A DNA stretch of 64,000 bases, from contig NC_135759.1 of NCBI RefSeq assembly GCF_052425735.1, forward strand, positions 26,412,001 to 26,476,000. Reading direction: 5' to 3'. The notes beneath the pieces were generated by a model. The model was not told where the DNA came from and did no database searches. It saw only the letters and a list, made by a program, of their open reading frames with translations. Positions 5,604-34,105 of this stretch are shown in pieces. The DNA is from Oculina patagonica (taxonomy: Eukaryota). Made by a program: the position numbers and the translations under genes. Each line of letters starts with the position of its first letter. Position 1 is the stretch's first letter.

Positions 5604-8600
5604 ATGGATTCATCGAACGCGGAAAATGAAGAGATCAGAGTTTTAGATGCCGAAACTCCAAGAGCTGCACCAAGAGATATCGTCCCGGCTTCAGAGAGTG
5701 ATAGTGATCTTGTGAGAAAACTACTGGCTGAGGTTTCGAAGATTCGCGAGGAAAATCAGCAGATGAAAAAGGAGTTAGAAAATATAAAGACAAAAGAAAA
5801 AGGAAAGTCCAAGAGATCGAGAGACAACGATCCTGAGTGCTCGGTAAGCAGTTATTTTCATTCGTATTTGATTTGACTCATATTTGAATTTACCGCTTGA
5901 CGAACGAACAAAGAGTGGGAAGATTAATGGCGGTTTATCACACGTGTGACAATTGTGATTCAAGATTGATGTTCAGATAGTTTAGACCATCATCCGAGAG
6001 AAGCCACTAATACGTGCCAAAAAAATGTCGAAGCACCTGAAGAAGTACGATGTTTGTGCACTAAATGGTATTTTATTGGTGCGACCAAAACGATAAACGT
6101 CAGAGCGCGCGAGTTTATTTGTTGTCTTTGTTCAAATCAGGCGTGCGTTAAATTGGAGTGGACAGGGACTCGAAGCCACTTCGGTCCCTGTCCACTTCTG
6201 TATTTTGATTCTTCAATTTCTATCAAATAGATGAAATAGCGTGTTGTTTAACTCCCAAAATCAGCCCTTTAGGTAATATCATTTTGAAGTTTCATTGGTA
6301 AGCATTCTGCAAACAAATAGCTTGTCGGGCCCCATAGTGACTGTGCCGCCGGGCCCAAACTGGATTGGAAGGCAGGGTTTGAGAAAAGTGCGCCAGGCTA
6401 GGACTAGAAGAATGGAAAATACAGGGCAATTTAAGCTCTTAATTTAGTGTTTAAATCGTTCTCGCAATTGTGTATCCGCGGTAGTTTGAATTACTTTCCA
6501 TTATAACGGAACGAGTTCTGTTCCAGAATGAAGTTTGTTTTGCATTTATATGGCGACCGACCCAGCATTTGCTATCCCGTGCCTTTTTTCGCGCCCGATT
6601 CAAAACAAGGATGGCGCCATTCTCGTACCTCGACTCCGGTTCATTCCTTACTGCGCAAGCTTTACGAAATGTTCGAGCAACTCGAGCTCTCAAATGTTTT
6701 ATTGCAAGATCGAATTTGATCGGTTTTGAAAACGATAAAAATGGCCGGCAGAAAAACACCAGTGAGCTCGTTGAGCCATTCGTTTGAAAGCTTGGCATGC
6801 GCAAATCAACCGGTCATAAAAGGTATTTTCGGACTTCAAATTGGAACTTTCCATTAACATTTTCGACTCCAGAGCACTTCTCTTTTATGCATGACTGTCG
6901 TCGTCAGTCACGCGCATAAGTAAAGAGCTCTAGGGTCTAGCTTTTGCGCAGTAAGGAACAAAGACTCTAGATACGAAAATGAAGTGGCGCGAGTTTCGCG
7001 TTAATTACGAATGCCCTAGCCTGAATTTCAGACAGGCTACCAATGCGCCATGTCCTAAAAACACGGTTTGCGGTTTAAAAATCTCGGAAAAGAGTTCGTT
7101 TTTATTTTACATAATGAGAGAGTGAGAAGTCATACCGCCATACAAAAATGTCATCAGTTTGAAGTGAAAACCGGAATGACTGAAATTAGCTTTGTATATC
7201 TTCTATTATTCAAGTTTGTTTTTATACTGTATCCTTTTCCTTTTTTTTGTTTAAAACCATAAAATAAAGAATGCCGTCAGGAACGTCTACAAAGAACTAA
7301 AAAAGCAACAGGAACAAGAGGAGGACGGGGAAAATAGGCCAGCGTTTGATTTCAGTGTCAGGTAAACCACAAATATATTATTTGATACAGTACTGCAGTT
7401 AATTTTATACTCAAAATAAATGTGAATTAAACTCTGCGCTGTTGCGATGCACATGTACATGTATGGAAAATAACATTGTATTTTTCAAAACGTAGTCAGT
7501 TGTCGGGACTTTTAAGAAATTGTCCCAGGGCCCTAGCATGTTTTGGGACAATAAGGTAACTGTTTCTTTTCTCGCGTCGAAGTTGAATTCTTTTTTAACC
7601 AATTCTAGGCATGTGAATGTATACTTAAGTTATTCTGGACTCTTTCACGTTCCCTAGTTCAGCCCATTTGTGAGGCAGGAAGGGAGAGTTGAGGGATGTT
7701 TCATTCGATTCAACAAAACTCAACAACGGTTCTATTGACAGTCATTTCAAAGTTTCTCTCCTTTTTTCTCTATTTTTAATGTTGCCCTTTATCTCTGTTG
7801 TTCTTGTAGCTTCCACAGTTCATCAAATCAAGCCATGGCCAAGAAAATCTTAACTGAAGTGCGCGCGGTGCACGGCAAGAAAAAATGGAAGAAGTCCACC
7901 ATTAAAGGTAAGCCTTGCTCGTAAACTTTTTACAAGAGCAGCGAAACCTCCTTTGTAAGTGGTAGGAGAAATCGACCCTCTCGAGAAGGTCAAAATAAAG
8001 TCATTATTTAAGAGAAAAGGGGACTCTGTGTATGCTTACAGCCTTTTGGAAAAACTTAATCCCGAATTGTCAATCAACAGTTAGTAATTCCCGAGAAAGC
8101 TTCTGTAATAAAACCTAAATGTGTGCGTACCAAAAGTTTATTCTGTTGACATTTATTCAAGAAGGGTTTTGAGTGGCTAAAGGTTGTGTTTAAAGGATAA
8201 AAAGAGAAACATCATACATGTAACAGTTTGCTTAAAAAGTCGTTTCAATAAACCTTATCACGGTTTTCGACGCCAGCAAAGCGGAAAGAAAGTACAGTGT
8301 TTGTATGGGAATCCGACGGCAAATATCTTGTACAAAAATTGAAATCCGGACAACTCATCATGAGTTGTAAAGTTAAGATACTGGGTAAAAGATTTTATTT
8401 GCCGAGTTTGAAGGATGCAGCTGGGCTAGAAAGCATTTAGTTACGTTTTTAATTTCCCATACCCCAATTTGTCTATATTTTTCCCGGCCCGCGAACCGCG
8501 TAAATTGCGGGAAAAAAATACAGACAAATGCATGGAAACATTAAAAACGTAACTGAACTCTTTCTAGCCCAGCTACATCCTTAATTCGAACTCGGCAAAT

Positions 8601-9665: not shown

Positions 9666-10039
9666 TACGAACGTTATGCACTGAGCAGTTGAAAAAGCAT
9701 GGTTATCTGACCGGTGTTGAATAATTTTCTGACATGTTACGTTCAAACGAAGAGCTAAAATCGTTTCAAATAATTACAATTATTATTATGTATCAAGGGT
9801 CGATTGTAAAACCAGAATATTGATTAAATTGAGCTGTGATGAAAATCTTACTTGTATTTGTGTGATTTTATAAAGTGGGGAATGGATTTGGCACACCGAC
9901 GGTACAAGTAAAAGTATGGCATGGGTGATAATTTTAACAGAGCAATTAAAACAAATTATTTACCAATCAAGCCCGTTATTGAGAAGGGAAGAATATGGAG
10001 TGCTAAAAAACAGTCAAAAATCAAACGTTTCCAACACGA

Positions 10040-10494
10040 AAACGCTTATTTCCGTCCAGTATTGAGCCTGATTACGTCAACGGAAACAAGAAAAAATAAC
10101 ATGTTTCCGGAACATTACCTGGTATTTCCGTCCTGTTTACGTCGACGGAAACCAGCAAATCATATTTCCGGAACGTTATCCCGTGATTCCGTCAACCTTT
10201 AAGTCTGTATACGTCGACGGAAACATGAAAAAAAGATATTTCCGGAACGTAATCGCGTGTTTCCGCAAAGGTAACCATGAGGTTCCGCTTGCGGAAACCG
10301 TTGTTTCCTTCAGCTGAAACTTGACGGAAACATGTAAAAAAGTGGTACGGTTCCGCTGTGACCGCAGCAACGGAAACACGAGTAAACGCCACGAAACCGC
10401 AGACGGAAACACGAGTTGTCCGTCATGTTTCCGCAACGGTGACACATGATTCCGCAACGTTTCCGTTTACGGAATCTTGGTATTTCGTCCTGTG
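10040..10494. repeat. CACTA subterminal repeat array and terminal inverted repeat
   Basis: More than 15 copies of CGGAAAC or (G/T)TTTCCG variants in both orientations, ending at CCTGTG. Confidence 0.85.
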
Positions 10495-10636
10495 AAAACA
10501 TACAACTATTGTAATTTTTAAAGCCTTTAAGAAGTCAGAAGTAATTGTGTGTTTTTTATAATTTGCTTAAACTGTCTATAAGAATAATCTATCTTCTTTA
10601 TTCTCATCTCTTAATTGATTATTCCACAAAATATAT

Positions 10637-11341
10637 TTACTTTTTATGTCGATATGAAAAATTTGAGCTCGAACCCCACCCTCCCCTGTAATCGTGGTCG
10701 CTTAAATTATCCGACATTGCGGGAATTTTAACAACCAATGTCCTCCTTTTAAGCCTCGAACTCGGCTTCAACTTTTCAGAATTGCAATTTCCATCACAAA
10801 TACTGCAATTTCCATATGGACCCAGTTTGCAGTTCGTTCTGTAAACAGGCGATTTCGCTCGTTTAAGATATTCCGCTTCCAGCTTCGATGCCGTGTGAAC
10901 GATTTCGTCAACTTTCAGTGCTTTTTGCCTCGTGGGTTTAAAGCTCGTAGAGTTTGCATTATCTCTCGCTATTTCTTTCAGACGTTGATCGTAGCCATCC
11001 CTTGAAGGTGGCGGTGTAAAGGAGTATCTATTTTTCAAATGTAAAGCTTCTCCGCAGATCTTATGTTGCAAAACGCAGAAGCAATCCTTCGTTACCAAGT
11101 AATCTTCCATTTCATCAACTTCAGGTGAAAGTTTTGTATCGCCAAGTCGTCGAGTTTGATGTAAGCGAGGGCTTGACTTCGGCAGTTTTCCTCTTAACTT
11201 TTCGTCGATTCCTTTCTTGAAGTTGGGTAAATCGCCAAGACTTTTGCTTAACTGTTTCATTGCGGTTTTCCGCATAACACATTCTTGGTCAGCTTCGCTT
11301 TGCTTCAAAATCTTCTTGCGTGCTGCACGAGTTCTATACAT
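10637..11341 (-). CDS. Intronless orphan ORF A (~234 aa from first ATG), basic
   Basis: Long open frame in AT-rich DNA, K/R-rich. Contains CSICDGNC and near-terminal RRTLVVKIP. No recognised domain. The frame stays open ~50 codons upstream of the ATG, so the start is uncertain. Confidence 0.6.
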   Translation of the reverse strand: MYRTRAARKKILKQSEADQECVMRKTAMKQLSKSLGDLPNFKKGIDEKLRGKLPKSSPRLHQTRRLGDTKLSPEVDEMEDYLVTKDCFCVLQHKICGEALHLKNRYSFTPPPSRDGYDQRLKEIARDNANSTSFKPTRQKALKVDEIVHTASKLEAEYLKRAKSPVYRTNCKLGPYGNCSICDGNCNSEKLKPSSRLKRRTLVVKIPAMSDNLSDHDYRGGWGSSSNFSYRHKK

Positions 11342-12417
11342 AACAGTCGTCCCGACAACGCAGCTCAAAGATTTCTTCCTTGTATAGTGAGGTGTCTGAA
11401 CGAATATTGCATCAATAACTTGGATTAATTGCAGCTGCCACGATCTTAAATGTAGATAGAATATTATACTGAATATTAAACTAGTGCTTTCCTTTTTTCA
11501 GCCAAGACCTGGTGGCGACGATATAATGTTTTCTATCCAAACGCATTGTTTTTCATCAGTGGTGTTTTGATAAATCTTTCTGTTATCGTGCTGTTTCGAT
11601 CTCACTCGAAGCCGAATTTGTATAATAATTATCTGCAGCAAATTACAAAATCTAAACTTCAAGGAAATTTGCATTGGGTAAACATGACGGCTCAAAATGA
11701 GACATGTTCTTCAAAGGCGGCAATAATTTGAATCTAAAAAAAAGAAATTAGATCGAATATGTAAACAAATCGACTCTAGAGGCTCCATGTCAATTAAGTG
11801 GGAGTCTTTTAACAGTGGCATATTGCAATACGAACAAAAGGCAAGTACATGTGTCTATCTGCATAACAAAGCAGATTTCCTGGCTTAATTCTCTAAAAGA
11901 CGCGAGACGAATCTGTACTAAAAATAATAGAAACCACGTCGCGTTAATTACGTACATTAATTGCGGTTAATTTTCTCTTCAGTAAACATTGCGGCTTCGC
12001 TAATCAGATAAGGAGATTAAGGTCGACAAAAATCTTCGTTTAAATTGCAATCAAGGCAAACTTGTACAAATGGTCGAGTGTCTGAGATCAAAATCCAGGC
12101 GGTTGAAGATTTGTGTGGATTAATGTCAGCGATGTGTTTACAATCAATGTACACAACTAAACACAATAGGAGGCATTTGAACTGCTGACTATTTTTAAAT
12201 TGGCCTGTGAAAAACACGCCGTCTTGCTTCGAGCTCCTTTATATACAGACGCGCGAGTGAAACGCTGTTTTCCTCCCACTGAACGAAAAACTTTGTATTC
12301 ACAGACATATATATAAATACATAGCTCCTATGTAATGCAAAATAAAAATAAACCCCGCATAACAACGTACAGCAATCAGTTCCTGTCAGATATATCATAG
12401 TGGATCTCTGAAATTCA

Positions 12418-12432
12418 GTTGCCCATAGCAAC
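12418..12432. promoter_or_regulatory. RFX X-box-like palindrome
   Basis: GTTGCCCATAGCAAC, ~1.1 kb upstream of ORF A. Confidence 0.35.
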
Positions 12433-12982
12433 AGGAACTTAGAACGTGTTATGATTACGCATGCGTCAACAAAGTCAAGATAGATCCTCGTCCCCAGGGG
12501 GTCTTCGTCGAGAATGCGGACCAGGTGCCTTGTAGCCGCGCAAAAGCAATTTGGATCATGCGCATTTGTGCTGTGGCATATAATGGATACCCAATCATTT
12601 GCTCTGATTGAATGTTAAACATGTTTATTTTCCAAGATACCTCAAAAAAGGCAAATGTCAGATAAAACAAAGGATCGTATCAGGCGCCTGCCCGCTGGTT
12701 ATTTTAACTATACCTATCCTAACCTGTTGCAGATGTGTTTTGAAGCAAAGCTAATTAATCTGAACTTATCTTATTGGCTCTAACCAAACTCTCCTTTTCT
12801 CGTTCATTAGTTGTGCTGCGGGATTATTTTAAAGCTCGAAAGAGTCCACATGTTCCATGAGTTTGACACACGTCCTTAATTGTTTGACTTAATTACACTT
12901 TGCTCACGAACGGTAGAGTGCAATAAGCAAAGGCAGATCCCAACCAAACTGTTTTAACAGTGTCTACACACGTTTTGTGATT

Positions 12983-13903
12983 TCAGGCCTCTTGATTGGT
13001 GTTCAGGCATGGCAGTTTGATGTCAATCTTTTTCGCCTGAATATGATTTGTCGCTACGTCTTGGCTTTCTGAGACACATAAAGAACACTTAGCAGCTGGT
13101 AAATTGTCTTCCAGGTTCGCCACTATGTCTTTCTGGGGTTTGACTCTCTTGCTTTCGCTTTTGCATGTTTGACGCAGTGAGTCGCAATGTACACTTTGTT
13201 TCCTTTCCCTTCCACTATACCAGGTTTGTATGGAGTTTAAATCAGGCATGGAAACATGCCTTTCCAAAGCCTTTTGTGGCACTGCTTCTAAACAGACAGG
13301 CGTATTGTTGTGCTTCCTACTCTCCTTATGATTATTCGCAAGAAACTTGGTGCTGAAAGTTCTTCGAAACAGAATCGCCTGTTGAACAGTCATGCCTGGA
13401 ACATCACATTTATCAGCTGAGCTTTGTTCAATCTTCAGCGCGTTTTTGTACTTGTAAAGTTGAGCTGGCGGAGACCTACCACGAAATGCGGGAGACGAGT
13501 AGCCCCACCTTTGACTGTGCTCATGAATGCCCCAGCTCGACTCGTCCTTACGTTTTATCTTGGTCACATTGGAGCGCGTTCTTTTAGATGAACTCTCTTT
13601 GCTAACAGGAAATCCAACAGGCTTGAATCCCCAGCTACTCACACGCGGCGGAGAACTGCCATCGACTCCAAACACAGCTGGAATGAGAGCGAAGCGTACC
13701 CTCCGGTTTTCGGTTTTTCCAAATTCGCTTTTGCGCTTGGATAGCTGTGTACAAATTGACATGACTTCAATGGCAGGTAGAAAGTCCTCAAACGAGTCGT
13801 CACTTGCCTGTGATCTGCTTCGAAACTCTTGTATGTCAAAGCATGGTGATGCTGGTGACTTCCGCGGACTTTGGGGAAATTCAACAGAGGTCGCCATCGG
13901 CAT
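12983..13903 (-). CDS. Intronless orphan ORF B (~306 aa from first ATG), S/K/R-rich
   Basis: Open frame of more than 900 nt. Contains RRVRF (RVxF), CSLC and C-terminal KKIDIKLP. Confidence 0.65.
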   Translation of the reverse strand: MPMATSVEFPQSPRKSPASPCFDIQEFRSRSQASDDSFEDFLPAIEVMSICTQLSKRKSEFGKTENRRVRFALIPAVFGVDGSSPPRVSSWGFKPVGFPVSKESSSKRTRSNVTKIKRKDESSWGIHEHSQRWGYSSPAFRGRSPPAQLYKYKNALKIEQSSADKCDVPGMTVQQAILFRRTFSTKFLANNHKESRKHNNTPVCLEAVPQKALERHVSMPDLNSIQTWYSGRERKQSVHCDSLRQTCKSESKRVKPQKDIVANLEDNLPAAKCSLCVSESQDVATNHIQAKKIDIKLPCLNTNQEA

Positions 13904-14925
13904 TAACCTGTGATTATCCACAGAGTCAGTAAAATGCAGTTACATGAATTTTTAGGTATATGATTGAAGTGGTTTATTAAAGTTGTATTACTGAAAAGGA
14001 CATTTTCGTATCTGACTTTTTGAAATTTACACCATATTTACAAACCAAATCAACTTTGTTCGCAATAGGTTCGCCCAAACCGCTTTATAGTCGATCGAAG
14101 CTAAGTCCGCTAGAGAGAGCTGTAATTTTAAACCTTCAATATTAAAACTATCTATCTATCTGGCTGGTCAAGCCAAGAATTGGTGCCTTGTTGTTGGCAC
14201 GGCGAAACCAGCCTTGTTACATCACTGGTTGTAGTGCTTTGCCCCTTCTCCCTCAAATATCTTCCTTGTAATTGTTATTACTTACTTATTATCGCCGTCC
14301 TATAGGTTTTGTGCGAATAAAAACTGAAAAAAACTAAATACATGTATAAAGGGTTTCAGCCTGTCGCTGATGCAAAAACTACCTTTCTGCACTGATGTCG
14401 ACGGTATTGTTATGCCCGACCAGCAAAAGTTCTGATTTAAACAAGACGTTGCAGCAATTGCTTTATAACTAGCCAAGTCATGCACATCGCACAAACAGAG
14501 AAATTTACCTTGCAGTGAAAAATGTCGTTTACGTATTTCCACTTGCCTAGGATTTAACCAACTTTTAAATCTTCTTGTTTACTTCGTCTTCTTAGCTGTC
14601 TCTAAGATTGAACTCTGTTTAATCAGACCCTCAGTAATCCTTCTGTGTGGGGGTATTATTAAGGTATTTGCATCGTTTTCATTTGTGATCTGATTGTTTT
14701 AATGAAAATGCAGACACCGGATTTATAGAGCTAACAAGTGAATGGAAAGTTGATTGATCAAAAGGCGTCGCGACCGATAGACAATGGAAAATGGGATTAA
14801 ACTAAGGATTACAGGTGCTGTCTATGTTGATTAAAATGAGTTCTTTATTTTTTTGTTTATTTATCGGCACGCATGATCCAATCTTGTACATTTGTTGCAC
14901 CCAAATTTCATTTCAAAATGATTAT

Positions 14926-15382
14926 CGGTGCTGGGCCGCGTCTTGCGATATAGTTTAAAGCAATGGATCTCAAAGTGGCACAGGCAAGGTCTTTCTTGGA
15001 ATAGTATATTCGTAGTACTACGAATATTGTTATCACTACAGAAGAGTCAGTTTCAATCCCTTATGAAGACTCATGCTTCAAAATTGGCCCGCTTAGTCTA
15101 CAAAAAAGTAGGCGTTGACAAACACATCAACAACTTATCGTCCTACCATCTATCGTTCTTCGAAAAACTTGTCCTATGCAGAGGACTACAACTTGCAATA
15201 CCTCAACAAGCATCTCCTCGAGATATTCAAGCAAGTTTTTAAAAAGCGTTTTGGAAGTTCGAACCACTGCTTCTATCAGATTCCAAGAAAGACCTTGCCA
15301 GTGCCACTTTGAGATCCATTGCTTTAAACTATATCGCAAGACGCGGTTCAACACCACCTAAAGCTCTGTTACAGGCCATTAA
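14926..15382 (+). mobile_element. Penelope-like retroelement fragment with 5' inverted segment
   Basis: Degenerate peptide NLSSYHLSFFEKLVLCRGLQLAIP..DIQASF*KAFWK resembles the region N-terminal to the RT in PLEs. 14926-15003 is the reverse complement of ~15280-15358. 12-bp direct repeat CAAAATGATTAT at 14914-14925 and 15383-15394. Confidence 0.7.
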
Positions 15383-16130
15383 CAAAATGATTATTCCTTT
15401 ATTAAATACCTAAGGTATTTTCCGGACGATGTTTTTTTTCGTGTTTTGGATTGCAATACAGCTTTTTCTAATTAAACAGAAAAGAAAACCACGAACCAAT
15501 ATCACAACTAAAAAATCATGCAACTGGTGACAGTTAGTTTTTAGTCACTGGCTGGTTGAAAAAAAAATCAATTCTGATTGATTAGAGCATGTGGCGCGAG
15601 TTCTTTGGACCCCAGTTACAGACTTCAGCAGACACAAAACAAACTGAGCGAAGTGCTTTCTAATTTTAAGCTCATCTGGAATGCAAAACGCAAAACGTTG
15701 GTTGGCCAGTCTGAAGCCTTTACTCACCTTTCCAGTGTTTGAATAGCCTTCGTTTCTCCATGCATGCGACCAAACTGATTTACTATAATGTTTGGAAAGA
15801 TGACTTACGAACATGCAGGCTTGTTTTTTATTAGTTCAGTAATTCTGTTTTACTGTGCCCAAGTATACAGTTGAAATTAAAGAGGCAAAGTCAATGGCTG
15901 ATGATCTCCAGATCAAAGAAAAAAAAACTCAAAATAATAGTCTGCTTAGACTAGGTTAGCCTCACACGCAGTCGGGGGCTGAGACTGGGTTGATAAGCAC
16001 CAATCAGGTAGTAATAAACGACGATGAAACCAGTAATGTGAAAGAAAAAACTGACGGATTGATTACGAACAAAAAATTCGAGCGGAATTTTTTTTAAAAC
16101 ATATTTTTTTAAAAACGTGACGCTGCTGTA

Positions 16131-16608
16131 CACTTAGTTGATATGTAGCTATTTTGTCCATTCACCGCTACAAAGGTCACTCAATATTACTTCTCAGATA
16201 CTTCAAAACACGCATTCTTGGTTGACAAACACTTCACAAAGTTGGATTTCGATTGGATTGAATTTACTTTCATTGTTTTTAAACGTGATCTCAAACACGA
16301 GCTACTAAGTTAGTTCTCATTTACTCGCAAACAAAAAAACCAATAAACCCGACAAAACCATATTTATAATTTTCGTTTGAAAGTGAAAACGCATACATAT
16401 AAACTGTAAATACAACAATAAGTTTTTCAATTTATTTGGCAACTAATTGTGTTGCGGTAACTCTTAAGCTTATATATAAACATTCCGCAATTATTAATTT
16501 GAACGAGTCTTATTGGTGCTCAAGACTAACTATATCGTAAACAGAACAACGATCGCTAGCGGGGTTTACTGATACCTTAGTCAAATTTGTATTGTTTATT
16601 TGGTGACT
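16131..16608 (+). repeat. Diverged duplicate of the upstream region of orphan ORF C (partner ~19487-19967)
   Basis: Colinear shared blocks: TAGTTGATATGTAGCTATTT, CTACAAAGGTCA.TCAATATTACTT, GTTGACAAACACTTCACA, CATTGTTTTTAAACGTGATC, TTGAAAGTGAAAACGCA, AATTGTGTTGCGGTAA, ATATTGTTTATTTGGT. Confidence 0.85.
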
Positions 16609-17086
16609 TATTACTGAACAGGATGTGATTGTGACCATATACCGTACTTGGGTTGTTTCTTATTAAACACGGGGCACGGGGTATTCACAACGTCAGTTCT
16701 ATTTGACCACAACCAATATCAGTTGTGTTGATATTGAACAACTCTTCCACATTCTGTATAATTCATGTATAAAGAGCTCAGGAAAACATTCATATTTGTT
16801 TTTCACTCATTGTTTTTATTTCGAATTCTCCTTTCAATTTAAGATGTGTTTACAAGTCATTGTGTGTTATCTTGCAGCGAGTTCCACGCTATTCAGCTAT
16901 GATTATGTGATTCACCGTACAAGTGCCAGTGTTCTCCTCACAATCAGTTTATATGCTACAAATTACAAGACAAAATACATGCATAGAGTTCAATCAGGTT
17001 TTGATCAGAATGCGTTAAAAAGTCTGACTCAGTTCATTGAGTTAAGCGAGGTCTGTCCAGTCCTTCATACTTGGATTGACAGTTTA

Positions 17087-17428
17087 TTAACGTCTCAGCC
17101 CGTTGTCTTCAATTAGCTTCTCTTCAGCATTCTCCTGATGCTCCGCACAGCATTCCATGCCGACGGTATCGGTATTCTGCCCTTCACGATCGGTATAATA
17201 CACCACAACTACTCTAACCATCCGCACCTTCTTTTTATCTCCTTGTTTTCTCCATCTACACTCATTGTCCATTAAATTGTGAGACATCGCTTTTACTTCC
17301 ACACGTTTGACTTCGTTCTTCCTATCCATCTTCACTAATGACAAAGCAAGCGTATTATGCGTGAGGAGATCAACAGGAGGAGACAGATATGTATTTTCTT
17401 TCAATCGCGTGACCTCAAATTTGATCAT
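17087..17428 (-). CDS. Possible small orphan ORF (80-113 aa)
   Basis: K/E/R-rich open frame with internal ATG at 17329 (MDRKNE...). CRE palindrome TGACGTCA at 17433 and X-box-like GTTCCCTAACAAC at 17516 lie just upstream. Confidence 0.3.
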   Translation of the reverse strand: MIKFEVTRLKENTYLSPPVDLLTHNTLALSLVKMDRKNEVKRVEVKAMSHNLMDNECRWRKQGDKKKVRMVRVVVVYYTDREGQNTDTVGMECCAEHQENAEEKLIEDNGLRR

Positions 17429-17579
17429 TCCATGACGTCATAGACTTCCTGCTTTTCTGAGAAACACATCCATACATCTGCTGGTCACATGGATAACAAT
17501 AGAATGCATACCAGAGTTCCCTAACAACCGACGGGTTTGAATGTAGATTTTATGTTTGCCTCAAGTGCTCGTAATTTAA

Positions 17580-18205
17580 TATCTTCGAATGATATTCATT
17601 GGAATAACTACTTTAAGGAAATCAAATTTATGTGCATAGAGAACAAACTTAAATAATTTTACTTCAAACTCGCTCATAGGATACTTGTTTCCAAAAAAGA
17701 ACTTTACCTCTTTGGAGTATCGAACAACTCGGACTGTACCTACTGCGGCTAGCCAGACTCGATAAGCCATACTTTCATCGAGTGCCACCTTTCTAAACTG
17801 AATTCTTACATAAAGTTTTACAACACTTCAATGAAGAAAACGGCACCTCCTTTACGCAAAGTGATGAAGAACTTCTCTTTGGTAAATTCCTAAATTCTGG
17901 TAATCTGCAACGACACCGTCTACAAAAGAAATTAAACTACTGCATGCTATTGAAAAGTATTACCTTTACAATCAGAAACTTAATAAAACAGTCTGAGGTA
18001 AATGAATTCGCTAGAAAGCTTAATTTCAAATACCGCGTACGTAGAGAAATTGATATAAAAATTAAGACTAGTTAAAAGTTATTGTTAGTTGCTAGGCTTT
18101 ATCAGTTAAATTATGTAACTTGATGTATTCTGTCTTCCTTTTTTTGTATGTGCCTTTTTTCACTTTCTGTAACATGTGTGATATTAAATAAATGTATAAA
18201 AAAAA
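17580..18205 (+). mobile_element. L1/Tx1-type LINE 3' remnant
   Basis: Stop-interrupted peptide ENKLK*FYFKLAHRILVSKKELYLFG..SDCTYCG*PDSISHTFIEC matches the C-terminal zf-RVT CCHC of L1/Tx1 ORF2. Ends in AATAAA plus an A-run near 18187-18205. Confidence 0.75.
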
Positions 18206-18554
18206 TATGCGTTGACGTCATGGGGTTATAAAAGCCAACCCCTTTCAAAATAGCCCCAAAAGCGATAATGAACACATTGGACTACTCGGAACGAACCGAG
18301 GATATGCAATTTGACGATACTTATTTAAACTCAGGGTATCGAATAAAAAAATGTTTTGTGAAACATTTGAGAAGAAAAATAAGCGATAGGAAAATAGAAC
18401 GACGTTTCGATGACGCCATGTCATCATTATCAAGTTAAAATTATAATACGGAGTTCAGGCTTATATAGTGATCTAGGGTGTGATAATATATTAGCATATT
18501 AAGATTTTAATTAAATAAACAGTTTAGCACGCACAGAATCTGATTGCGTGTTAA

Positions 18555-18812
18555 AGGGACATGGTCAGCCTTCTTACCACGCTGACCTGGACACTAGTTT
18601 TCACGTTTTGAAAAAAGACCACTGTGGACTTTTTTCAAAACGAGCCATCAGAAATCTGCTTTAATCTTCTCAGTGTTTCACTAAATGGGAAAATTTAGAA
18701 GAAAAAAAAAACACTGAGAAGATTGAAGCAGATTTCTTAAGGTTCTCTACGCGTATTTTGATTTTGGGTTAAGGTGGACTTTTTTCAAAACGTGAACGCT
18801 GACCATGTCCCT
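18555..18812. mobile_element. MITE with TTAA TSD (Kolobok-type ends)
   Basis: TTAA-AGGGACATGGTCAGC ... GCTGACCATGTCCCT-TTAA, followed by a 50-bp-period tandem duplication (18813-18907). Confidence 0.8.
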
Positions 18813-20076
18813 TTAAGTTTCGGCTTTATGTTTCTAATAAAGAGCATTTCGTAAATTGAATGTTAAGTTTCGGCTTTATGTTTCTAATAAAGAGCATTTC
18901 GTAAATTAATTAATTCCGCCACGATCCTCCGCCATTTTGTTTCTCATGCCCGCGCGCCTTCGTTTCTGTATCCAGCTGTCTCCTGCGAATCTAACAAGCG
19001 ACTTGGAGCAAGTCTAGAACAAGTTATGCGGAAGGACGAGTTGACGGATTACGAAAAACGAACTTGAGAAATTTACGTGAAGCATCAGGGAAATGGTCAA
19101 AACTATTGTACTCAGACAAGACCCACCACTCTGCAAAAAGACAGGTGGTCTCTTCATGTACCCCCTTTCCCCACCTTAAAAGATGGTGTCTTGTTTGTAT
19201 AGCCCCCACTCTATCAGGAGTAGAAACTAAGAAAAAAATTTCAAACCTCCTTGTGCCATTTCTCCAGCAAGGCAAGCTTCATGCACACCTAATATGAAAG
19301 TCTCAACTCAAATTTTAAGGCCAATAAATTTTGTCCATTTGGCTAATCAGACAGGTGGTATCTTGCATAGCCCGCCCCCTACACAAGGTGGTTCCTCATC
19401 GAGTACACTTGTTATGACCACTTCCCTAAGCGTGCTTCCGCGCGTGACGGAGCTTCGTTTATAACTTTATGCTTATGTGGTTTACTCACGTAGTTGATAT
19501 GTAGCTATTTATGTCCATTTACCACTACAAAGGTCAGTCAATATTACTTAAAACACTTAAAGACGGCAGTGATTGATGGCAAATAGTTGACAAACACTTC
19601 ACACAGTTTGATCTCGATTGGATTGAACTGATATTGTCATTGTTTTTAAACGTGATCGCAAACAAGAGCCGTTAAGTTCGTTCTCAGTTATTTGGAATGT
19701 TAAGTCATTAAAAATAAATTTCAACAATCAGCCAATAAATCTGACAAAACCTAATTACTTTTCACTCACACAATTGAAAGTGAAAACGCACACATAACTG
19801 TAAACACAACAATGAGTTATTAGAATTTATACATGACAAACAATTGTGTTGCGGTAATTCTTAAGCTAATAAATATTCCGCAATTATCAATTTGAACGAA
19901 TCGTATTGGCGTTCAAGAAGAAAAGAATTTCCTTTGTTAAACAAATTTATATTGTTTATTTGGTAACACGCAAAGAGACCTCAACATAAGCTAACGGCGT
20001 GGGACATCAACACAAGAGAAATAACTGCAGCTATGTATTTTAAATGCTTGAATAAAAGTATTCTTTTTATGGTGTA

Positions 20077-20997
20077 ATGGATAGAAAGTCTACAGGCACA
20101 AAAACATCAAAAGACCAATCAATTGAGCAGGCATTAAGGAGGCTTAAATATTTACACACTTCGCTTATGCCACACGAAGCAAGCACAAGTCAAAATGAAC
20201 ATAAAATTGACGACAAAATTTTATTGACCAAAGGTTTGCAGCCGGGAATCGAGAAACCATTTACCAGGGCTAGAAGAACTCCAGAGAAACAATGTTTTCT
20301 ATCTTTACAGCCCAAGACTTCAAGGACGCCTGGAGAAAAAGCTAAAACCCGGGTCGTTAAGCGTAAACAAGAGAAGAAAACGAAAGCTCTTCGAACAGGC
20401 CGTGCGCCATTACAGGCTTATCGCCCAACAAGTTCTTCAGTGGCAGGAGATGAAACACTTGAAACGAAAAGCGACAATGGAATAATTCTGAAAGATTACA
20501 CTGTCGGTACTGAAGAACGTACTACTCAGTCGGCGTCAGGGACGTTCTGCACCGCTGACCCTTACAAATGCGTTCAGTGTTTCACGAACAACTTTAGTGA
20601 GCACGCTCACAGGAAGAAAGCGACCAGACAGTATTTTACAAACATGAGGATCAATCGTGTTACTTTCTCTGCTCGGCCGAGTGGCCACAAGGTCAAGTCA
20701 GTACGTGAAAACAAAATTGAAGTTCCTAAAAGTTGTTTCTTTAATGGCTGGGGCGTGCGGTCTAAGAAGGAATCTTTACCAAACGGGAACACAAACAACG
20801 ATTTAAAACGACAAGCCGCGAAGGAAACCATGGATGTGACTGTCGGTTTAAAGACTCTTAGACTAGAACCCAAGAGAGTACAACATGAATACACTGAGCA
20901 AACAATCCCCCAGCCCCCTCCCACACCTGTTCGACAAATTGACATCAAGCTACCTCAAGGGGTAATGGTAAGGTATCAATTGCCAGAAGACGATTAA
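20077..20997 (+). CDS. Intronless orphan ORF C (306 aa), basic
   Basis: ATG in good context (GTAATGG), 921-nt frame, AATAAA at ~21060. Contains CVQC, NRVTF (RVxF), PQPPPTP and C-terminal RQIDIKLP. Confidence 0.7.
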   Translation: MDRKSTGTKTSKDQSIEQALRRLKYLHTSLMPHEASTSQNEHKIDDKILLTKGLQPGIEKPFTRARRTPEKQCFLSLQPKTSRTPGEKAKTRVVKRKQEKKTKALRTGRAPLQAYRPTSSSVAGDETLETKSDNGIILKDYTVGTEERTTQSASGTFCTADPYKCVQCFTNNFSEHAHRKKATRQYFTNMRINRVTFSARPSGHKVKSVRENKIEVPKSCFFNGWGVRSKKESLPNGNTNNDLKRQAAKETMDVTVGLKTLRLEPKRVQHEYTEQTIPQPPPTPVRQIDIKLPQGVMVRYQLPEDD

Positions 20998-22109
20998 CTG
21001 ACTGTAGACATCTGAAATTATGGCAAGAAGAGGAGAAGTAAAAATGATCATCTTATTCCAATAAATCAGTACTGATCAGGTAACTAAATTCTCCTCACTA
21101 TATCTAATACAGTCCGAAATATATTCAGACTCTACGAGTTTTCGTAGTGCAAGCTAGATAGTTAATATAAACAAACTATATTGAGACCAGAAAGGCTACT
21201 TTCTAAATATTGAGGACTCTTGAAAGGGTTTAGCTCCCTGTATTGTGAGAAGCGTGTCATGGGTTCTGGCACTGGTTGTTCATTCAGTTACAAATCAGTA
21301 TCAAATATTATGAAAACTGTAAACTGTGATCGTTTTGTTGGTGACACTGGCCATTAATTTATCGATGTTAAACAAATTTGTATTCCACTGTTTCAATAAA
21401 GATTATATTTACTTAAAAAATCTGTCAGTGAAAATCTTTGTTTTAATATATGGACAGTTATGCAGCTGGCAAACATCAAGGTTCCCAATGGGCTATAAAT
21501 TCTTCCAGCCCAAGCTTTAGACTCTGTAGTGGAGAATTTTCTGTGGCAATCAGAGAAATTCATCTGCTTGAAAATGAAACAAAACTGCTGCAAACAAGGG
21601 AAAGGACGACAAACACGATTACAAAGGATTTAAGGGAGCTAAAAATGAGTTTTCAAAGTTGAAAGTTTGTCTTTTAGAGTTTTTCATTATGTTTACAAAT
21701 TAGTCACGTGATAAAATTTAGTTTTATCATATTAATTATCTAGATTTACAAAGGCAGTTAATTGTATAGAAAGTAACATTCTTTTAAACGGGCATTGTCC
21801 TTACAATATTGGCATTTAAACGCTTTACAGTATTATAGAACAATATGGGAGAATTCGCGCTTTTGTTTTGAATTAACAAAGACTGTCGATTTAAGAAAAT
21901 TCTGCTTCTAAAGATAAATCGAGTGTTAAACACTTTTAAGGACCGATGGAAATAAACCGCCATTTGAGGTCCTAAAATGTGTGCTACCCGCTAAAAAAGT
22001 ACTTCATAAGAAAATTAGAGCGACATATATTAATATTTTCTGCATCAGGTACAGTCAGTAAATAAATGTCATATTTTTGCTTAATTTAAATATTTCACGA
22101 CAACAACTA

Positions 22110-23102
22110 TTAATTATTGATATCGTTTACATCTTCTTTGGACCTGGTGCTCTGTGTTGAAATGGGAGAATATAGATGAATTTCGTGTAGAAATTCACTA
22201 AAATGTACGTTTCGTTTATATTTTGGTTGCGAATCTTCAATTTCAGTAACACCATTTTGTATTTCTTTCGGTCTGACTCCTTCAATCGACAAACTTCCGC
22301 TCTCAAGTTCATTCCACTTTGCTAAGCGATAGGGTGGAATTTCAATATTTACAAAAGGCACTAGCCAAAGATGCCCTTCATCAGTACTTATTGCCTCGGA
22401 AGATAAGTTTATTTCTCTCGGCGGTGTGATACGTGGAATTTTCGGAACGCCTGATATCGAAGAAGAGTTAACGCCATTGCCAAAGTCGTGAAGCATAAAA
22501 TGGTCTCTAGGCAACTGTCGAACAGTTAAACAAGTCTCTGCAGTAAACGTGCTCGGCTCGTTACGAGAATTTTGCGGATTGCGTTTCTTCTTTCGGTGTG
22601 GTTTAATAGTATTAACTTTGCTGTCCTTAATTTTAGGCAACGGCGGCATTTTTGGGAGCGTTGTGTAAAATATTTCTTTATTTTCTGGTGGTATACCCTC
22701 CAATTTCGGCAACACAAGTTGCGCGCGATCTTCGGAGTGAGTCACAATGCGGTCGTCAACAAAATTACCATTAGCATCACTTTTAACAAGAAGCTGCTTC
22801 AAATAATCTTTGTCATTAAAATAAATCGGTTTCGATAAGTCCTCATGCTGATGTTTTGGTGAAGCTTTCTTGCGCCGTGCACGCGATTCTGTTAATCCGT
22901 TGTTAGACACTAGTTCCTCGCAAGCTTGTGGCTTTCTGTTGGCTTGTTTCTCGTCAGCCCTGTTTGTGTCGGATAATCCTTTTCTAAATATGCGCACAGC
23001 CTTTTCTTCATAGCGTCTATGTAACAGTAACAGTTCCTGAACCTCTTTGTAACTCCTTTTATCCTTCACTGCTGTAGGAGAACCGGTCAAAGCGAGTGGC
23101 AT
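22110..23102 (-). CDS. Intronless orphan ORF D (330 aa), candidate PP1-interacting protein
   Basis: 993-nt frame with basic NLS-like clusters, VNIEIPP and C-terminal KRNVHFSEFLHEIHLY (RVxF plus hydrophobic pair). Confidence 0.7.
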   Translation of the reverse strand: MPLALTGSPTAVKDKRSYKEVQELLLLHRRYEEKAVRIFRKGLSDTNRADEKQANRKPQACEELVSNNGLTESRARRKKASPKHQHEDLSKPIYFNDKDYLKQLLVKSDANGNFVDDRIVTHSEDRAQLVLPKLEGIPPENKEIFYTTLPKMPPLPKIKDSKVNTIKPHRKKKRNPQNSRNEPSTFTAETCLTVRQLPRDHFMLHDFGNGVNSSSISGVPKIPRITPPREINLSSEAISTDEGHLWLVPFVNIEIPPYRLAKWNELESGSLSIEGVRPKEIQNGVTEIEDSQPKYKRNVHFSEFLHEIHLYSPISTQSTRSKEDVNDINN

Positions 23103-33524: not shown

Positions 33525-34105
33525 GATCGATACTGAAACATAAAAAACATATAAATTAAAACCTACCAATCCTAAAACAAGGGTTTCCATCTAAAGGCGT
33601 AGCTACCCGATAAATTCGTAGACCCTGGCCACAAATTTTGTAGGAAAATTCGTTAATATGTTGTTTCCCTGGGTGCCATAAGAGACTTTTCTTACTTCCG
33701 GCCGTTCCCGAAGAATTTTAGCCGGAAATGTCAGTCTTATCTCCCGCTCTCTGGGCGAGGCATTTCTCCCCTTTGGTACCCCCCTTCCCCCCCCCCCCCG
33801 CCCATCCCCGCGTGCCCGCCACTTTCCCGCGTGCTGGGAATGGTGTCGCGCGTTTCAGCCTTCGGTTGGGAAGCAGCGCGAAGAACGGCGACTGAACAAT
33901 AACGCTTTTTTCGCGCTGCTTACCGGCACGGGGTGGCGGGATGCCGGTTTTCAAGCGAAATTAGGTGGTTTTTACTGACACGCCGCCAAAAATAAATCCA
34001 AAGCTATCGAGTCAAAAAAATCAAGAATATTACAGGTTGTAGAAAACTGCTATATAAACTACTTGTCCAAGTCTCAGGTCTGTACGTTATTCCGTACTCG
34101 AGTAA

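What the first reader, a model, noticed from the sequence alone, without database searches (positions are those of the whole stretch)
10637..23102. Cluster of intronless orphan genes sharing only short linear motifs (IDIKLP-like, RVxF, CxxC)
Seen: four 234-330 aa single-exon, basic, low-structure ORFs within 12.5 kb, not alignable by eye. B and C have the identical hexapeptide IDIKLP within ~20 aa of their C-termini. A has LVVKIP and D has VNIEIP. B, C and D carry RVxF-type sites (RRVRF, NRVTF, KRNVHF). A, B and C each have one CxxC. Known: RVxF docks protein phosphatase 1, and hydrophobic-x-hydrophobic motifs after basic residues are typical phosphatase/MAPK docking sites. Inference: an undescribed, fast-evolving family of disordered phosphatase-targeting adaptors conserved at motif level only.
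Basis: partly seen in the sequence, partly recalled or inferred. Interest (0 to 1): 0.75.

Follow-up and report, generated by a model that had tools for sequence, protein, structure and literature searches.

The report
Conserved coral cluster of disordered-protein genes
Four neighbouring coral genes encode basic, mostly unfolded proteins that have stayed side by side since corals and sea anemones split; one of them ends in a textbook docking site for protein phosphatase 1, and two share a conserved tail motif whose partner is unknown.

Summary
They are real genes, not orphans. Each is single-copy and under purifying selection (dN/dS 0.18-0.37). All four keep the same order and orientation (A-, B-, C+, D-) in four other stony corals. 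B, C and D do so in Nematostella. Transcript-like contigs cover A, and a spliced contig covers B.

They are not one family. Profile-profile comparison finds nothing between them except a 9-column match on the B/C tail motif. None has a Pfam or PDB relative. C and D fold as mostly disordered chains.

The motifs fare differently:
- **D's KRNVHF** is part of an invariant 18-residue C-terminal block, an RVxF plus PhiPhi string. A complex model docks it into the canonical PP1 groove (score 0.90, best control 0.01).
- **C's RVTF** is well conserved but lost in Nematostella.
- **B's RVRF and the CxxC pairs** are no better conserved than their surroundings.
- **IDIKLP** is the best-conserved block of B and among the best of C. 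Of 14 pattern sites in the genome, only those in B and C lie in long ORFs.

Verdict: four undescribed hexacorallian families. D is a likely PP1-binding subunit. B and C share a tail motif with an unknown partner. Moderately interesting.

The parts
10637..11341 (-). Gene A coding sequence (234 aa from the ATG, stop at 10637-10639); basic, disordered-type protein
   Evidence: ORF. Single copy. Orthologues next to B in L005, L006, L007, L010 and L012. dN/dS 0.29-0.37. Covered by transcript-like contigs in X1 and X2 and by two poly(A) reads in X21.
10721..10738 (-). A tail motif LVVKIP, preceded by KRRT. Family pattern is [LI]VV[KRH][ILM]P
   Evidence: V203, V204 and P207 are invariant in 6 of 6 sequences. 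90th percentile of conservation. Coordinates verified.
10640..10654 (-). A C-terminal YRHKK, the best-conserved block of family A
   Evidence: Y230, R231, H232 and K233 are invariant. 97th percentile.
12983..13897 (-). Gene B coding sequence (304 aa from the conserved ATG; an in-frame ATG two codons upstream at 13903 is specific to this genome)
   Evidence: ORF. Single copy. 32 homologues (alignment A1). dN/dS 0.21-0.28. Start-codon context compared across species.
13908..14508 (-). Intron in the 5' UTR of B (GT at 14508-14507, AG at 13909-13908 on the minus strand); exon 1 lies just above 14509
   Evidence: An X2 contig joins ...CACTGCAAG to GTTAAT... (tables 5 and 5c). Canonical donor and acceptor in the window. 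The acceptor is conserved in L005, L006, L007, L032 and L033, and the donor in L032.
13004..13033 (-). B tail motif KKIDIKLPCL, the best-conserved block of family B
   Evidence: K291-L300 are invariant or nearly so, including in members at 27-29% identity. 98th percentile. Nematostella B ends ...KKIAVKLPCLE. Short forms P0040 and P0042 keep it.
13691..13702 (-). B RVRF: matches the RVxF pattern but is poorly conserved
   Evidence: Variants RVRM, RARY, RANL and RVHF occur. Absent from distant and short forms. 49th percentile.
20077..20997 (+). Gene C coding sequence (306 aa), head to head with B
   Evidence: ORF. Exact match to an annotated NCBI protein of this genome. Single copy. 46 homologues reaching Nematostella A7SMU0/LOC5506383. 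dN/dS 0.22-0.28. AF2 mean pLDDT 50.
20131..20157 (+). C N-terminal invariant block ALRRLKYLH, inside the predicted helix 11-28
   Evidence: Invariant in 27 of 27 sequences. Helix.
20656..20667 (+). C RVTF, inside the conserved block TNxxINRVTFSARP; a candidate PP1 docking site
   Evidence: 90th percentile. 96% of members have an RVxF match. Nematostella has QVTV and P0088 has QVMF at this position.
20938..20955 (+). C tail motif IDIKLP, inside PPTPVRQIDIKLPxG; first strand of a predicted C-terminal hairpin
   Evidence: 91st percentile. IDIKMP in Nematostella. Strands E287-291 and E297-301. The only profile-profile match to B.
22110..23102 (-). Gene D coding sequence (330 aa), tail to tail with C
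   Evidence: ORF. Exact match to an annotated NCBI protein. Single copy. 44 homologues plus Nematostella LOC116614133. dN/dS 0.18-0.23. AF2 mean pLDDT 51.
22164..22217 (-). D C-terminal block KRNVHFSEFLHEIHLYSP: RVxF (R297-F301) followed by a PhiPhi pair (I308-H309); predicted PP1 docking string
   Evidence: K296, N298-E303, L305, H306, H309-Y311 and P313 are invariant in 24 of 24 sequences, including Nematostella. Top window of the family. Docked in the PP1 RVxF groove and along beta14 in the complex model.
22632..22718 (-). D central conserved block L(V/R)LPKLEGIPPENKEIFYTTLPKMPPLPK, function unknown
   Evidence: L129, L131, P132, E140, K142, I144-T147 and L149 are invariant. 96th percentile for ENKEIFYT.
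22335..22352 (-). D VNIEIP: conserved in stony corals only and not part of the shared tail motif
   Evidence: Replaced by unrelated residues in P0132, P0133 and Nematostella. 0 of 24 D proteins match the tail pattern.

Best explanation
The stretch holds four separate, single-copy genes. Each has one coding exon and encodes a basic, mostly disordered protein of 234-330 aa.

Each gene founds its own family. So far these families are seen only in hexacorallian cnidarians (stony corals and sea anemones). The four have been kept as one block (A-, B-, C+, D-) since before corals and anemones diverged.

Their working parts are short conserved islands in otherwise fast-changing chains.
- **D** ends in an invariant RVxF-PhiPhi string. 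It most likely works as a PP1-interacting subunit. V299 and F301 plug into the RVxF pockets of the PP1 catalytic subunit, and FLHEIHLY extends the PP1 beta14 sheet. The N-terminal helix and the central ENKEIFYT block would then be free to bind a target or a location. This last step is inferred.
- **C** carries a well-conserved RVTF that may dock PP1 in the same way. This is inferred and was not tested.
- **B and C**, and perhaps A, share a basic, strand-forming tail motif, [KR][KRQ]-Phi-x-Phi-[KR]-Phi-P. It probably binds one common partner, which is unknown.

Shown here: the genes, their conservation, synteny, selection, disorder, motif conservation and transcription of A and B. Supported only in silico: D docking to PP1. 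Inferred: everything about cellular role.
For: **Genes are real.** They are single-copy. Full-length orthologues exist. dN/dS is 0.18-0.37. C and D are annotated proteins of this genome. X1 covers only A across 5 kb. X2 has a depth-58 contig on A, against 6 or less elsewhere, and a spliced contig over the B 5' UTR intron.

**Synteny.** Order and orientation are the same in L005, L006 (Stylophora), L007 (Desmophyllum) and L010 (Acropora). B, C and D are in the same arrangement in Nematostella L009.

**Separate families.** hhalign gives P>0.18 for five of six pairs. No Pfam hit and no PDB hit.

**Disorder.** AF2 mean pLDDT is 50-51 with pTM 0.15-0.21.

**D and PP1.**
- The KRNVHFSEFLHEIHLYSP block is nearly invariant, with 13 of its 18 positions identical in all 24 sequences.
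- It fits the published RVxF pattern [K/R]-X0-1-[V/I/L]-X-[F/W] (PMC10731240, read).
- The complex model scores 0.90 in runs of 0.90, 0.90 and 0.89, against a best control of 0.01.
- On eukaryotes this mark was reached by 71 of 105 solved pairs and 2 of 126 unrelated pairs.
- The runs share at least 73% of contacts, and partner pLDDT is at least 54.
- V299 touches PP1 residues 168-169, 242-243, 289 and 291. F301 touches 261 and 290-292. Residues 304-310 run along 292-297.

**Tail motif.**
- It is the top block of B and at the 91st percentile in C.
- It is the only B-C profile match (P=0.003).
- Only B and C carry it in long ORFs genome-wide.
- The generalised pattern is present in the last 45 residues of 6/6 A, 17/19 B, 23/27 C and 0/24 D proteins.
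Against: - PP1 binding rests on a model, not a measurement. Many RVxF complexes are solved, so the high score may reflect memory of the motif class rather than this protein's behaviour (caveat stated).
- The PP1 chain used was a vertebrate-type PP1-alpha (P0273, residues 1-300), not the coral protein. The coral exon recovered is 100% identical to it over 79 residues.
- No partner is known for the tail motif.
- Including A relies on a pattern widened after seeing A.
- Nematostella C has lost the RVxF consensus (QVTV).
- C and D expression was not tested with reads.
- The taxonomic range is a lower bound.
Confidence: 0.6

Rival explanations
1. One reading: A-D are one undescribed, fast-evolving family of disordered phosphatase-targeting adaptors that kept only their docking motifs.
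For: - All four are of similar size and are basic, disordered and encoded by one exon.
- They are adjacent and syntenic.
- B and C share the tail motif.
- C and D have conserved RVxF sites.
Against: - There is no profile-level similarity between A, D and the others.
- A has no RVxF.
- B's RVxF is unconserved and is absent from short B forms that keep the tail motif.
- The CxxC pairs are unremarkable.
- Each family is conserved along its whole length, not only at motifs.
- Nothing ties the tail motif to a phosphatase.
Confidence: 0.12
2. B and C, and possibly A, are ancient local duplicates. B and C would have arisen by an inverted duplication, since they lie head to head. They diverged beyond recognition, so the shared tail motif is a relic of common descent rather than convergence.
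For: - The genes are neighbours, head to head, in all species examined including Nematostella.
- Lengths are nearly identical (304 and 306 aa).
- The motif sits at the same position near the C-terminus.
- The motif is the single best profile-profile match.
- The motif is unique to these two genes in the genome.
Against: No collinear similarity appears outside 9 columns, even with relaxed hhalign settings. The other conserved blocks (ALRRLKYLH, TGRAPL, NGWG against SSPAF, AILFRR, HNNTPV) have no counterparts. This rival concerns origin and is compatible with the main explanation.
Confidence: 0.3
3. The four genes are functionally unrelated neighbours. Synteny persists through shared regulatory DNA or inertia, the RVxF of D is a conserved element with another role, and the B/C motif is convergent.
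For: - The families are not homologous.
- RVxF-like strings are common by chance.
- A and B differ greatly in coverage in the same runs. X1 covers A only, and X2 gives depth 58 on A against about 5 on B. This argues against tight co-expression.
Against: D's motif is an extended invariant RVxF-PhiPhi string, not a bare four-residue match, and it docks in the canonical groove with clean controls. Two of the 14 genome-wide IDIK[LF]P-coding sites fall in adjacent conserved genes at the same relative position, which is hard to get by chance.
Confidence: 0.2
4. The ORFs are spurious, or are remnants of mobile elements (a CACTA transposon lies next to A).
For: - A transposon ends at 10494, about 140 nt from A's stop (earlier finding s1-281576).
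- The spacer between B and C is full of repeats.
- A and B are not found as annotated proteins of this genome.
Against: - Each ORF is single-copy in 529 Mb.
- Each is syntenic across species that lack the transposon.
- Each is under purifying selection.
- Contigs in X1, X2 and X13 run from gene A's flank into unrelated, non-transposon sequence at 10495, as expected of an allele without the insertion.
Confidence: 0.01

Closest known systems
PP1-interacting proteins that dock through an RVxF-PhiPhi string (PNUTS, spinophilin/neurabin, PPP1R15A/B, Phactr)
   Same: D has a disordered docking region. It has an RVxF match ([K/R]-X0-1-[V/I/L]-X-[F/W], PMC10731240). A hydrophobic pair follows 6 residues later and is modelled as a strand against PP1 beta14. 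Predicted contacts include PP1 I169, L243, R261, C291 and F293, residues named for the human PNUTS complex in that paper.
   Different: - D has no sequence homology to any of them (no Pfam or PDB hit).
- The string lies at the very C-terminus.
- No Arg or Trp motif appears in the predicted interface.
- The rest of the protein (N-terminal helix, ENKEIFYT block) is unlike any named PP1 subunit.
- Binding is predicted, not measured.
Mitotically regulated RV[S/T]F PP1 docking sites (KNL1, Repo-Man, NIPP1 type; from general knowledge)
   Same: C's RVTF has a phosphorylatable Thr at the x position and lies in a disordered, basic context. It is conserved in 96% of family members.
   Different: There is no homology to these proteins. 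The site is lost in Nematostella (QVTV). No docking test was run for C.
Taxon-restricted, fast-evolving gene clusters kept in microsynteny (a general class, not a family)
   Same: The genes are small, have one coding exon and are lineage-restricted. Their order and orientation have been conserved for a long time.
   Different: Here the neighbours are not detectably paralogous, yet two of them share a unique conserved linear motif.

Membership tests
RVxF-type PP1-interacting proteins (RIPPOs/PIPs) | Sequence match to [K/R]-X0-1-[V/I/L]-X(not P)-[F/W] | tested here: met
   D RNVHF, C RVTF and B RVRF match; A has none. On its own this means little, because 30-56% of shuffled sequences also match.
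RVxF-type PP1-interacting proteins (RIPPOs/PIPs) | The motif is conserved above its surroundings across orthologues | tested here: met
   D: invariant in 24 of 24 sequences and the top window. C: 90th percentile, but lost in Nematostella. B: not met, at the 49th percentile and absent from distant and short forms.
RVxF-type PP1-interacting proteins (RIPPOs/PIPs) | The motif lies in an intrinsically disordered region | tested here: met
   AF2 pLDDT is 46-56 around D residues 291-320 and 48-54 around C residues 181-210, with no secondary structure there.
RVxF-type PP1-interacting proteins (RIPPOs/PIPs) | Val and Phe insert into the two hydrophobic pockets of PP1c (I169, L243, F257, R261, C291, F293) | tested here: met
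   Tested for D only and in silico only. The score is 0.90 against a best control of 0.01. On eukaryotes the mark was reached by 71 of 105 solved pairs and 2 of 126 unrelated pairs. V299 touches 168-169, 242-243, 289 and 291. F301 touches 261 and 290-292. The result may reflect memory of solved RVxF complexes.
RVxF-type PP1-interacting proteins (RIPPOs/PIPs) | Physical binding to PP1c that is lost on V/F mutation | not testable with these tools
   Needs pull-down, isothermal titration calorimetry (ITC) or affinity purification-mass spectrometry (AP-MS).
Extended RVxF-PhiPhi-R(-W) string (PNUTS/spinophilin/PPP1R15 class) | A PhiPhi pair 5-8 residues after RVxF, forming a strand on PP1 beta14 | tested here: met
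   I308-H309 lie 6 residues after F301. Residues 304-310 contact PP1 292-297, and H309 contacts R74. The published description allows degenerate pairs.
Extended RVxF-PhiPhi-R(-W) string (PNUTS/spinophilin/PPP1R15 class) | An Arg motif 8-9 residues after PhiPhi that binds PP1 D71, L296 and P298 | tested here: inconclusive
   A conserved K/R lies 10 residues after H309. The confident interface stops at residue 313.
PPP1R15/GADD34-type PP1 subunits | Homology to the PP1-binding and eIF2alpha-recruiting region | tested here: not met
   No Pfam family is hit by any of the 24 D proteins, and the profile finds no PDB relative. D ends 17 residues after the docking string.
One homologous A-B-C-D gene family | Profile-profile similarity over a domain-sized stretch | tested here: not met
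   hhalign gives B-C 9 columns (P=0.003, probability 10-12%). All other pairs give P 0.18-0.76.
Calcineurin (PxIxIT, LxVP) or MAPK D-motif docking for the IDIKLP-type tail | Match of the conserved tail to the published docking patterns. The patterns were written from memory of the ELM motif database, so treat this as a lead only. | tested here: not met
   No PxIxIT or LxVP match falls on the tail in A, B or C. The loose MAPK pattern fits A and B but not C, which has a single basic residue, and it hits 70-100% of all members somewhere.

The most novel reading that the evidence does not exclude
The block is an ancient, co-inherited module of cnidarian-specific PP1 regulation. D docks PP1 through its RVxF-PhiPhi tail. 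B and C (and A) are recruited to the same machinery through a previously undescribed C-terminal docking motif, [KR][KRQ]-Phi-x-Phi-[KR]-Phi-P. That motif would be a new class of short linear motif with a dedicated partner, and it would explain why four non-homologous genes have stayed together since before corals and anemones split.
Probability: 0.15. Interest if true: 0.65.

Novelty: new member of a known kind. Interest (0 to 1): 0.42.

Why it matters
PP1 gains its specificity from hundreds of disordered partner proteins. Almost all known partners come from yeast and vertebrates. D would be a cnidarian-restricted partner with a textbook docking string, and its Nematostella orthologue LOC116614133 makes it testable in a tractable model.

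The B/C tail motif is a clean case of a linear motif that outlasted all other similarity between two neighbours. It offers a handle for finding its partner.

All named database entries for these genes read 'uncharacterized' or 'hypothetical'. A and B were not found among this genome's annotated proteins in any of the forms tried, and the Stylophora gene model merges A into a neighbouring gene. The result therefore also corrects annotation.

Tried and rejected
- **Known-family searches, all blank.** Pfam on the four proteins and on all members of the C and D alignments gave only sub-threshold noise. PDB profile searches for all four families were blank. ESM Atlas feature searches for A, C and D gave no usable hit.
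- **Literature, blank.** Searches for the motif strings and for RefSeq/UniProt identifiers found nothing relevant.
- **Earlier notes.** A word search of earlier scan notes was blank.
- **Mobile-element origin.** Rejected, because every ORF is single-copy.
- **Coral PP1c for the complex test.** No intronless PP1c was found in this genome. The two long metallophosphatase open frames did not look like PP1: by eye one resembles a diadenosine-tetraphosphatase (ApaH)-type phosphatase and the other the lariat-debranching enzyme DBR1. I therefore spent the single exhaustive protein search on a coral PP1c exon to obtain a full-length PP1c. The first candidates, P0231 and P0218, are mis-spliced after residue 263 and lack the strands that form the RVxF groove, so I dropped them. 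P0273 residues 1-300 was used instead.
- **Cost of that choice.** No exhaustive profile search was run for families A-D.
- **Logan contigs.** L031 and L032 are collinear with the genome across intergenic DNA, so they say nothing about transcription.
- **Gene A in Nematostella.** Not found within 10 kb of Nematostella C, using a family HMM.
- **B against C.** Relaxed hhalign gave no further collinear similarity.

Full report
**1. The observation**

The window is G000:C2:26412001-26476000 of a 529-Mb cnidarian genome.
- A is 10637-11368(-), 234 aa from its ATG.
- B is 12983-13921(-).
- C is 20077-20997(+), 306 aa.
- D is 22110-23102(-), 330 aa.

They are basic (pI 9.2-10.0) and strongly hydrophilic. 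They have no Pfam domain and no pairwise BLASTP similarity.

**2. Real genes, not orphans**

Each ORF is single-copy in the genome.

C and D are exact matches to annotated NCBI proteins of this genome. A and B are not, under any start codon I tried.

Homology searches gave full-length relatives for three of the genes:
- B has 32 relatives, including Desmophyllum and Stylophora.
- C has 46, including Montipora, Acropora and Nematostella A7SMU0.
- D has 44.

Every named hit is 'uncharacterized' or 'hypothetical'.

Pairwise dN/dS against four other corals is 0.18-0.37. That indicates purifying selection, but a relaxed one, as expected for disordered proteins.

**3. Synteny**

I fetched the DNA around orthologues. 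The same order and orientation (A-, B-, C+, D-) is found in:
- an unnamed coral contig (L005),
- Stylophora (L006),
- Desmophyllum (L007),
- Acropora (L010).

In Nematostella (L009) the arrangement holds for three genes. An unannotated B ORF lies at 6266-7252(-), C at 10001-10984(+) and D at 12547-13446(-). A family HMM did not find A there. An A-like gene does sit next to a distant B-like gene on L012.

An amino-acid transporter gene flanks D in Stylophora, Desmophyllum and the window.

**4. Transcription and gene structure**

- Run X1 (same species; several contigs are identical to the window) covers 10495-11401, which is gene A. It covers nothing over the next 3.5 kb.
- Run X2 (a related species) has a 950-nt contig of depth 58 on A, against 6 or less elsewhere.
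- The poly(A) run X21 has two reads on A's strand.
- One X2 contig joins ...CACTGCAAG directly to GTTAAT.... In the window these are a canonical donor (AAG|GTAAAT at 14509/14508) and acceptor (CAG|G at 13908/13907). B therefore has a 601-nt intron in its 5' UTR and is transcribed and spliced.
- The acceptor is conserved in five other species.

Only the coding sequences are intronless.

**5. One family or four**

I built alignments for B (A1), C (A2), D (A3) and A (A4). Profile-profile comparison of all six pairs gives nothing (P 0.18-0.76), with one exception. B against C matches over 9 columns, xxxIDIKLP, with P 0.002-0.003 and probability 10-12%. No further collinear similarity appears with relaxed settings.

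The four are therefore separate families by every test available. Profiles of all four find nothing in the PDB. The ESM Atlas gives no usable lead.

**6. Disorder**

AlphaFold2 with the family alignments gives these results:
- D: mean pLDDT 51, pTM 0.21.
- C: mean pLDDT 50, pTM 0.15.
- Each has an N-terminal helix (D 18-41, C 11-28).
- C also has a C-terminal hairpin whose first strand is QIDIK (287-291) and whose second is VRYQL (297-301).

**7. Which motifs matter**

Conservation percentile among same-length windows of each family:

| Family | Motif | Percentile |
|---|---|---|
| B | IDIKLP | 98th (IKLPCL is the top window) |
| B | RVRF | 49th |
| B | CSLC | 57th |
| C | IDIKLP | 91st |
| C | RVTF | 90th |
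| C | CVQC | 68th |
| D | NVHF | top window, invariant |
| D | VNIEIP | 82nd |
| A | LVVKIP | 90th |
| A | CSIC | 39th |

Further points:
- The best block in C is the N-terminal ALRRLKYLH.
- D's VNIEIP is replaced by unrelated residues outside stony corals.
- RVxF-like strings occur in 30-56% of shuffled versions of these proteins. Only conservation gives them meaning.
- B's RVRF varies (RVRM, RARY, RANL) and is missing from distant B proteins.
- The short acroporid-type B forms P0040 and P0042 lack that whole region but keep KIDIKLPCL.

**8. The tail motif**

The degenerate coding pattern for IDIK[LF]P occurs 14 times in 529 Mb. The reversed control occurs 21 times, so there is no enrichment. 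Only two of the 14 sites lie in long open frames. These are B and C, 8 kb apart, 8 and 13 residues from their C-termini.

The motif is kept in Nematostella B (KKIAVKLPCLE) and Nematostella C (RQIDIKMPEG). It is therefore as old as the cluster.

Widened to Phi-x-Phi-[KRH]-Phi-P, the pattern is present in the last 45 residues of 6/6 A, 17/19 B, 23/27 C and 0/24 D proteins. Including A rests on a pattern loosened after the fact, so it is weaker.

The tail does not fit calcineurin PxIxIT or LxVP patterns. It fits the loose MAPK D-motif pattern only in A and B. These patterns were written from memory of the ELM motif database. Its partner is unknown.

**9. D and PP1**

D ends in KRNVHFSEFLHEIHLYSP. 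Thirteen of these 18 positions are identical in all 24 sequences, including Nematostella, and the other five are nearly so. RNVHF fits the published RVxF pattern [K/R]-X0-1-[V/I/L]-X-[F/W]. The I308-H309 pair lies six residues later, where PhiPhi motifs sit (PMC10731240).

To test docking I needed a PP1 catalytic subunit.
- The genome's PP1c genes are split by introns. I used the one exhaustive protein search on a coral PP1c exon.
- I discarded two mis-spliced models and took P0273 residues 1-300, a PP1-alpha-type sequence. The coral exon is 100% identical to it over 79 residues.

The complex model of this chain with D residues 276-330 gave the following:
- Scores of 0.90, 0.90 and 0.89, against a best control of 0.01.
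- On eukaryotes this mark was reached by 71 of 105 solved pairs and 2 of 126 unrelated pairs.
- The runs share at least 73% of contacts, and partner pLDDT is at least 54.
- V299 contacts PP1 residues 168-169, 242-243, 289 and 291.
- F301 contacts residues 261 and 290-292.
- Residues 304-310 run along beta14 (292-297).

This is the canonical RVxF-PhiPhi binding mode. The tool warns that such a pass may come from memory of solved complexes. It shows likeness, not binding.

**10. Conclusion**

Four undescribed hexacorallian gene families sit here in an ancient microsyntenic block.
- D is a likely PP1-interacting subunit (my estimate is about 0.6).
- C is a possible one (about 0.35).
- B's RVxF and the CxxC pairs carry no signal.
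- B and C, and perhaps A, share a conserved tail motif of unknown partner. It may be a relic of an old duplication or a shared docking site.

The range 'Hexacorallia only' is a lower bound, because no exhaustive profile search was run for these families.

Noticed in passing
window 10494-10495: The right end of the neighbouring CACTA transposon lies about 140 nt downstream of gene A's stop codon, inside the stretch covered by A's transcript-like contigs. Contigs in X1 (identical to the window over 10495-10663), X2 and X13 continue from 10495 into unrelated, non-transposon sequence. The insertion therefore appears to be absent in other individuals or species and may sit in A's 3' UTR.
   Followed up: partly
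window 13897-13910: Compared with five related species, the window lacks 14 nt at the start of B's second exon (GTTAAT|GCCG against GTTAATTCAACACTATCCTCGCCG in L032). This creates an extra in-frame ATG two codons upstream of the conserved start.
   Followed up: partly
window 14900-19900: The spacer between B and C is 6.1 kb here but about 1.8 kb in L005. It holds a repeat of about 630 bp (17580-18207; more than 20 copies at 82-88% identity) and a repeat of about 345 bp (19087-19430; 16 or more copies at 92-95%), both scattered over many chromosomes.
   Followed up: partly
window 26318-27646 and 32196-33590 (both -): Two uninterrupted ORFs for Aa_trans (PF01490) amino-acid transporters, 94% identical to each other, form a recent tandem duplicate. 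A single such gene flanks D in Stylophora and Desmophyllum.
   Followed up: partly
window 57299-58888 (-): A 529-aa open frame with a Hairy_orange domain (E 1.4e-8). It is probably the large last exon of a Hes/Hey-type bHLH-Orange gene.
   Followed up: no
window 40803-41369 (+): A 188-aa ORF with no Pfam hit. Its conservation was not examined.
   Followed up: no
L006 13287-14012 (Stylophora LSMT01000869.1): The Stylophora orthologue of A has no ATG at the conserved start (Leu instead of Met). The published gene model appears to merge it into the 5' end of a 1378-aa TTL/aldehyde-dehydrogenase gene, which is probably a mis-annotation.
   Followed up: partly
L010 6843-7502 (Acropora): The Acropora copy of B is open only over its C-terminal two thirds. 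Its tail reads HTRKLPCL, so the KIDI part of the motif is missing. Related short forms (P0040, P0042) keep KIDIKLPCL. B may be decaying in this lineage.
   Followed up: partly
L009 6266-7252 (-) (Nematostella OW051999.1): The Nematostella orthologue of B is an intact open frame ending KKIAVKLPCLE. It is not among the called genes of that locus.
   Followed up: partly
D residues 129-132 (window 22707-22718): An invariant L-x-L-P (LVLP or LRLP) opens D's central conserved block. It fits the loose calcineurin LxVP pattern (written from memory) in 24 of 24 D proteins. This was not tested further.
   Followed up: no
G000:C3:13899736-13900593 (L013) and G000:C1 (L014): Two metallophosphatase genes lie in uninterrupted open frames elsewhere in the genome. 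Judged by eye only, the 285-aa one resembles a diadenosine-tetraphosphatase (ApaH)-type phosphatase and the 533-aa one the lariat-debranching enzyme DBR1.
   Followed up: no
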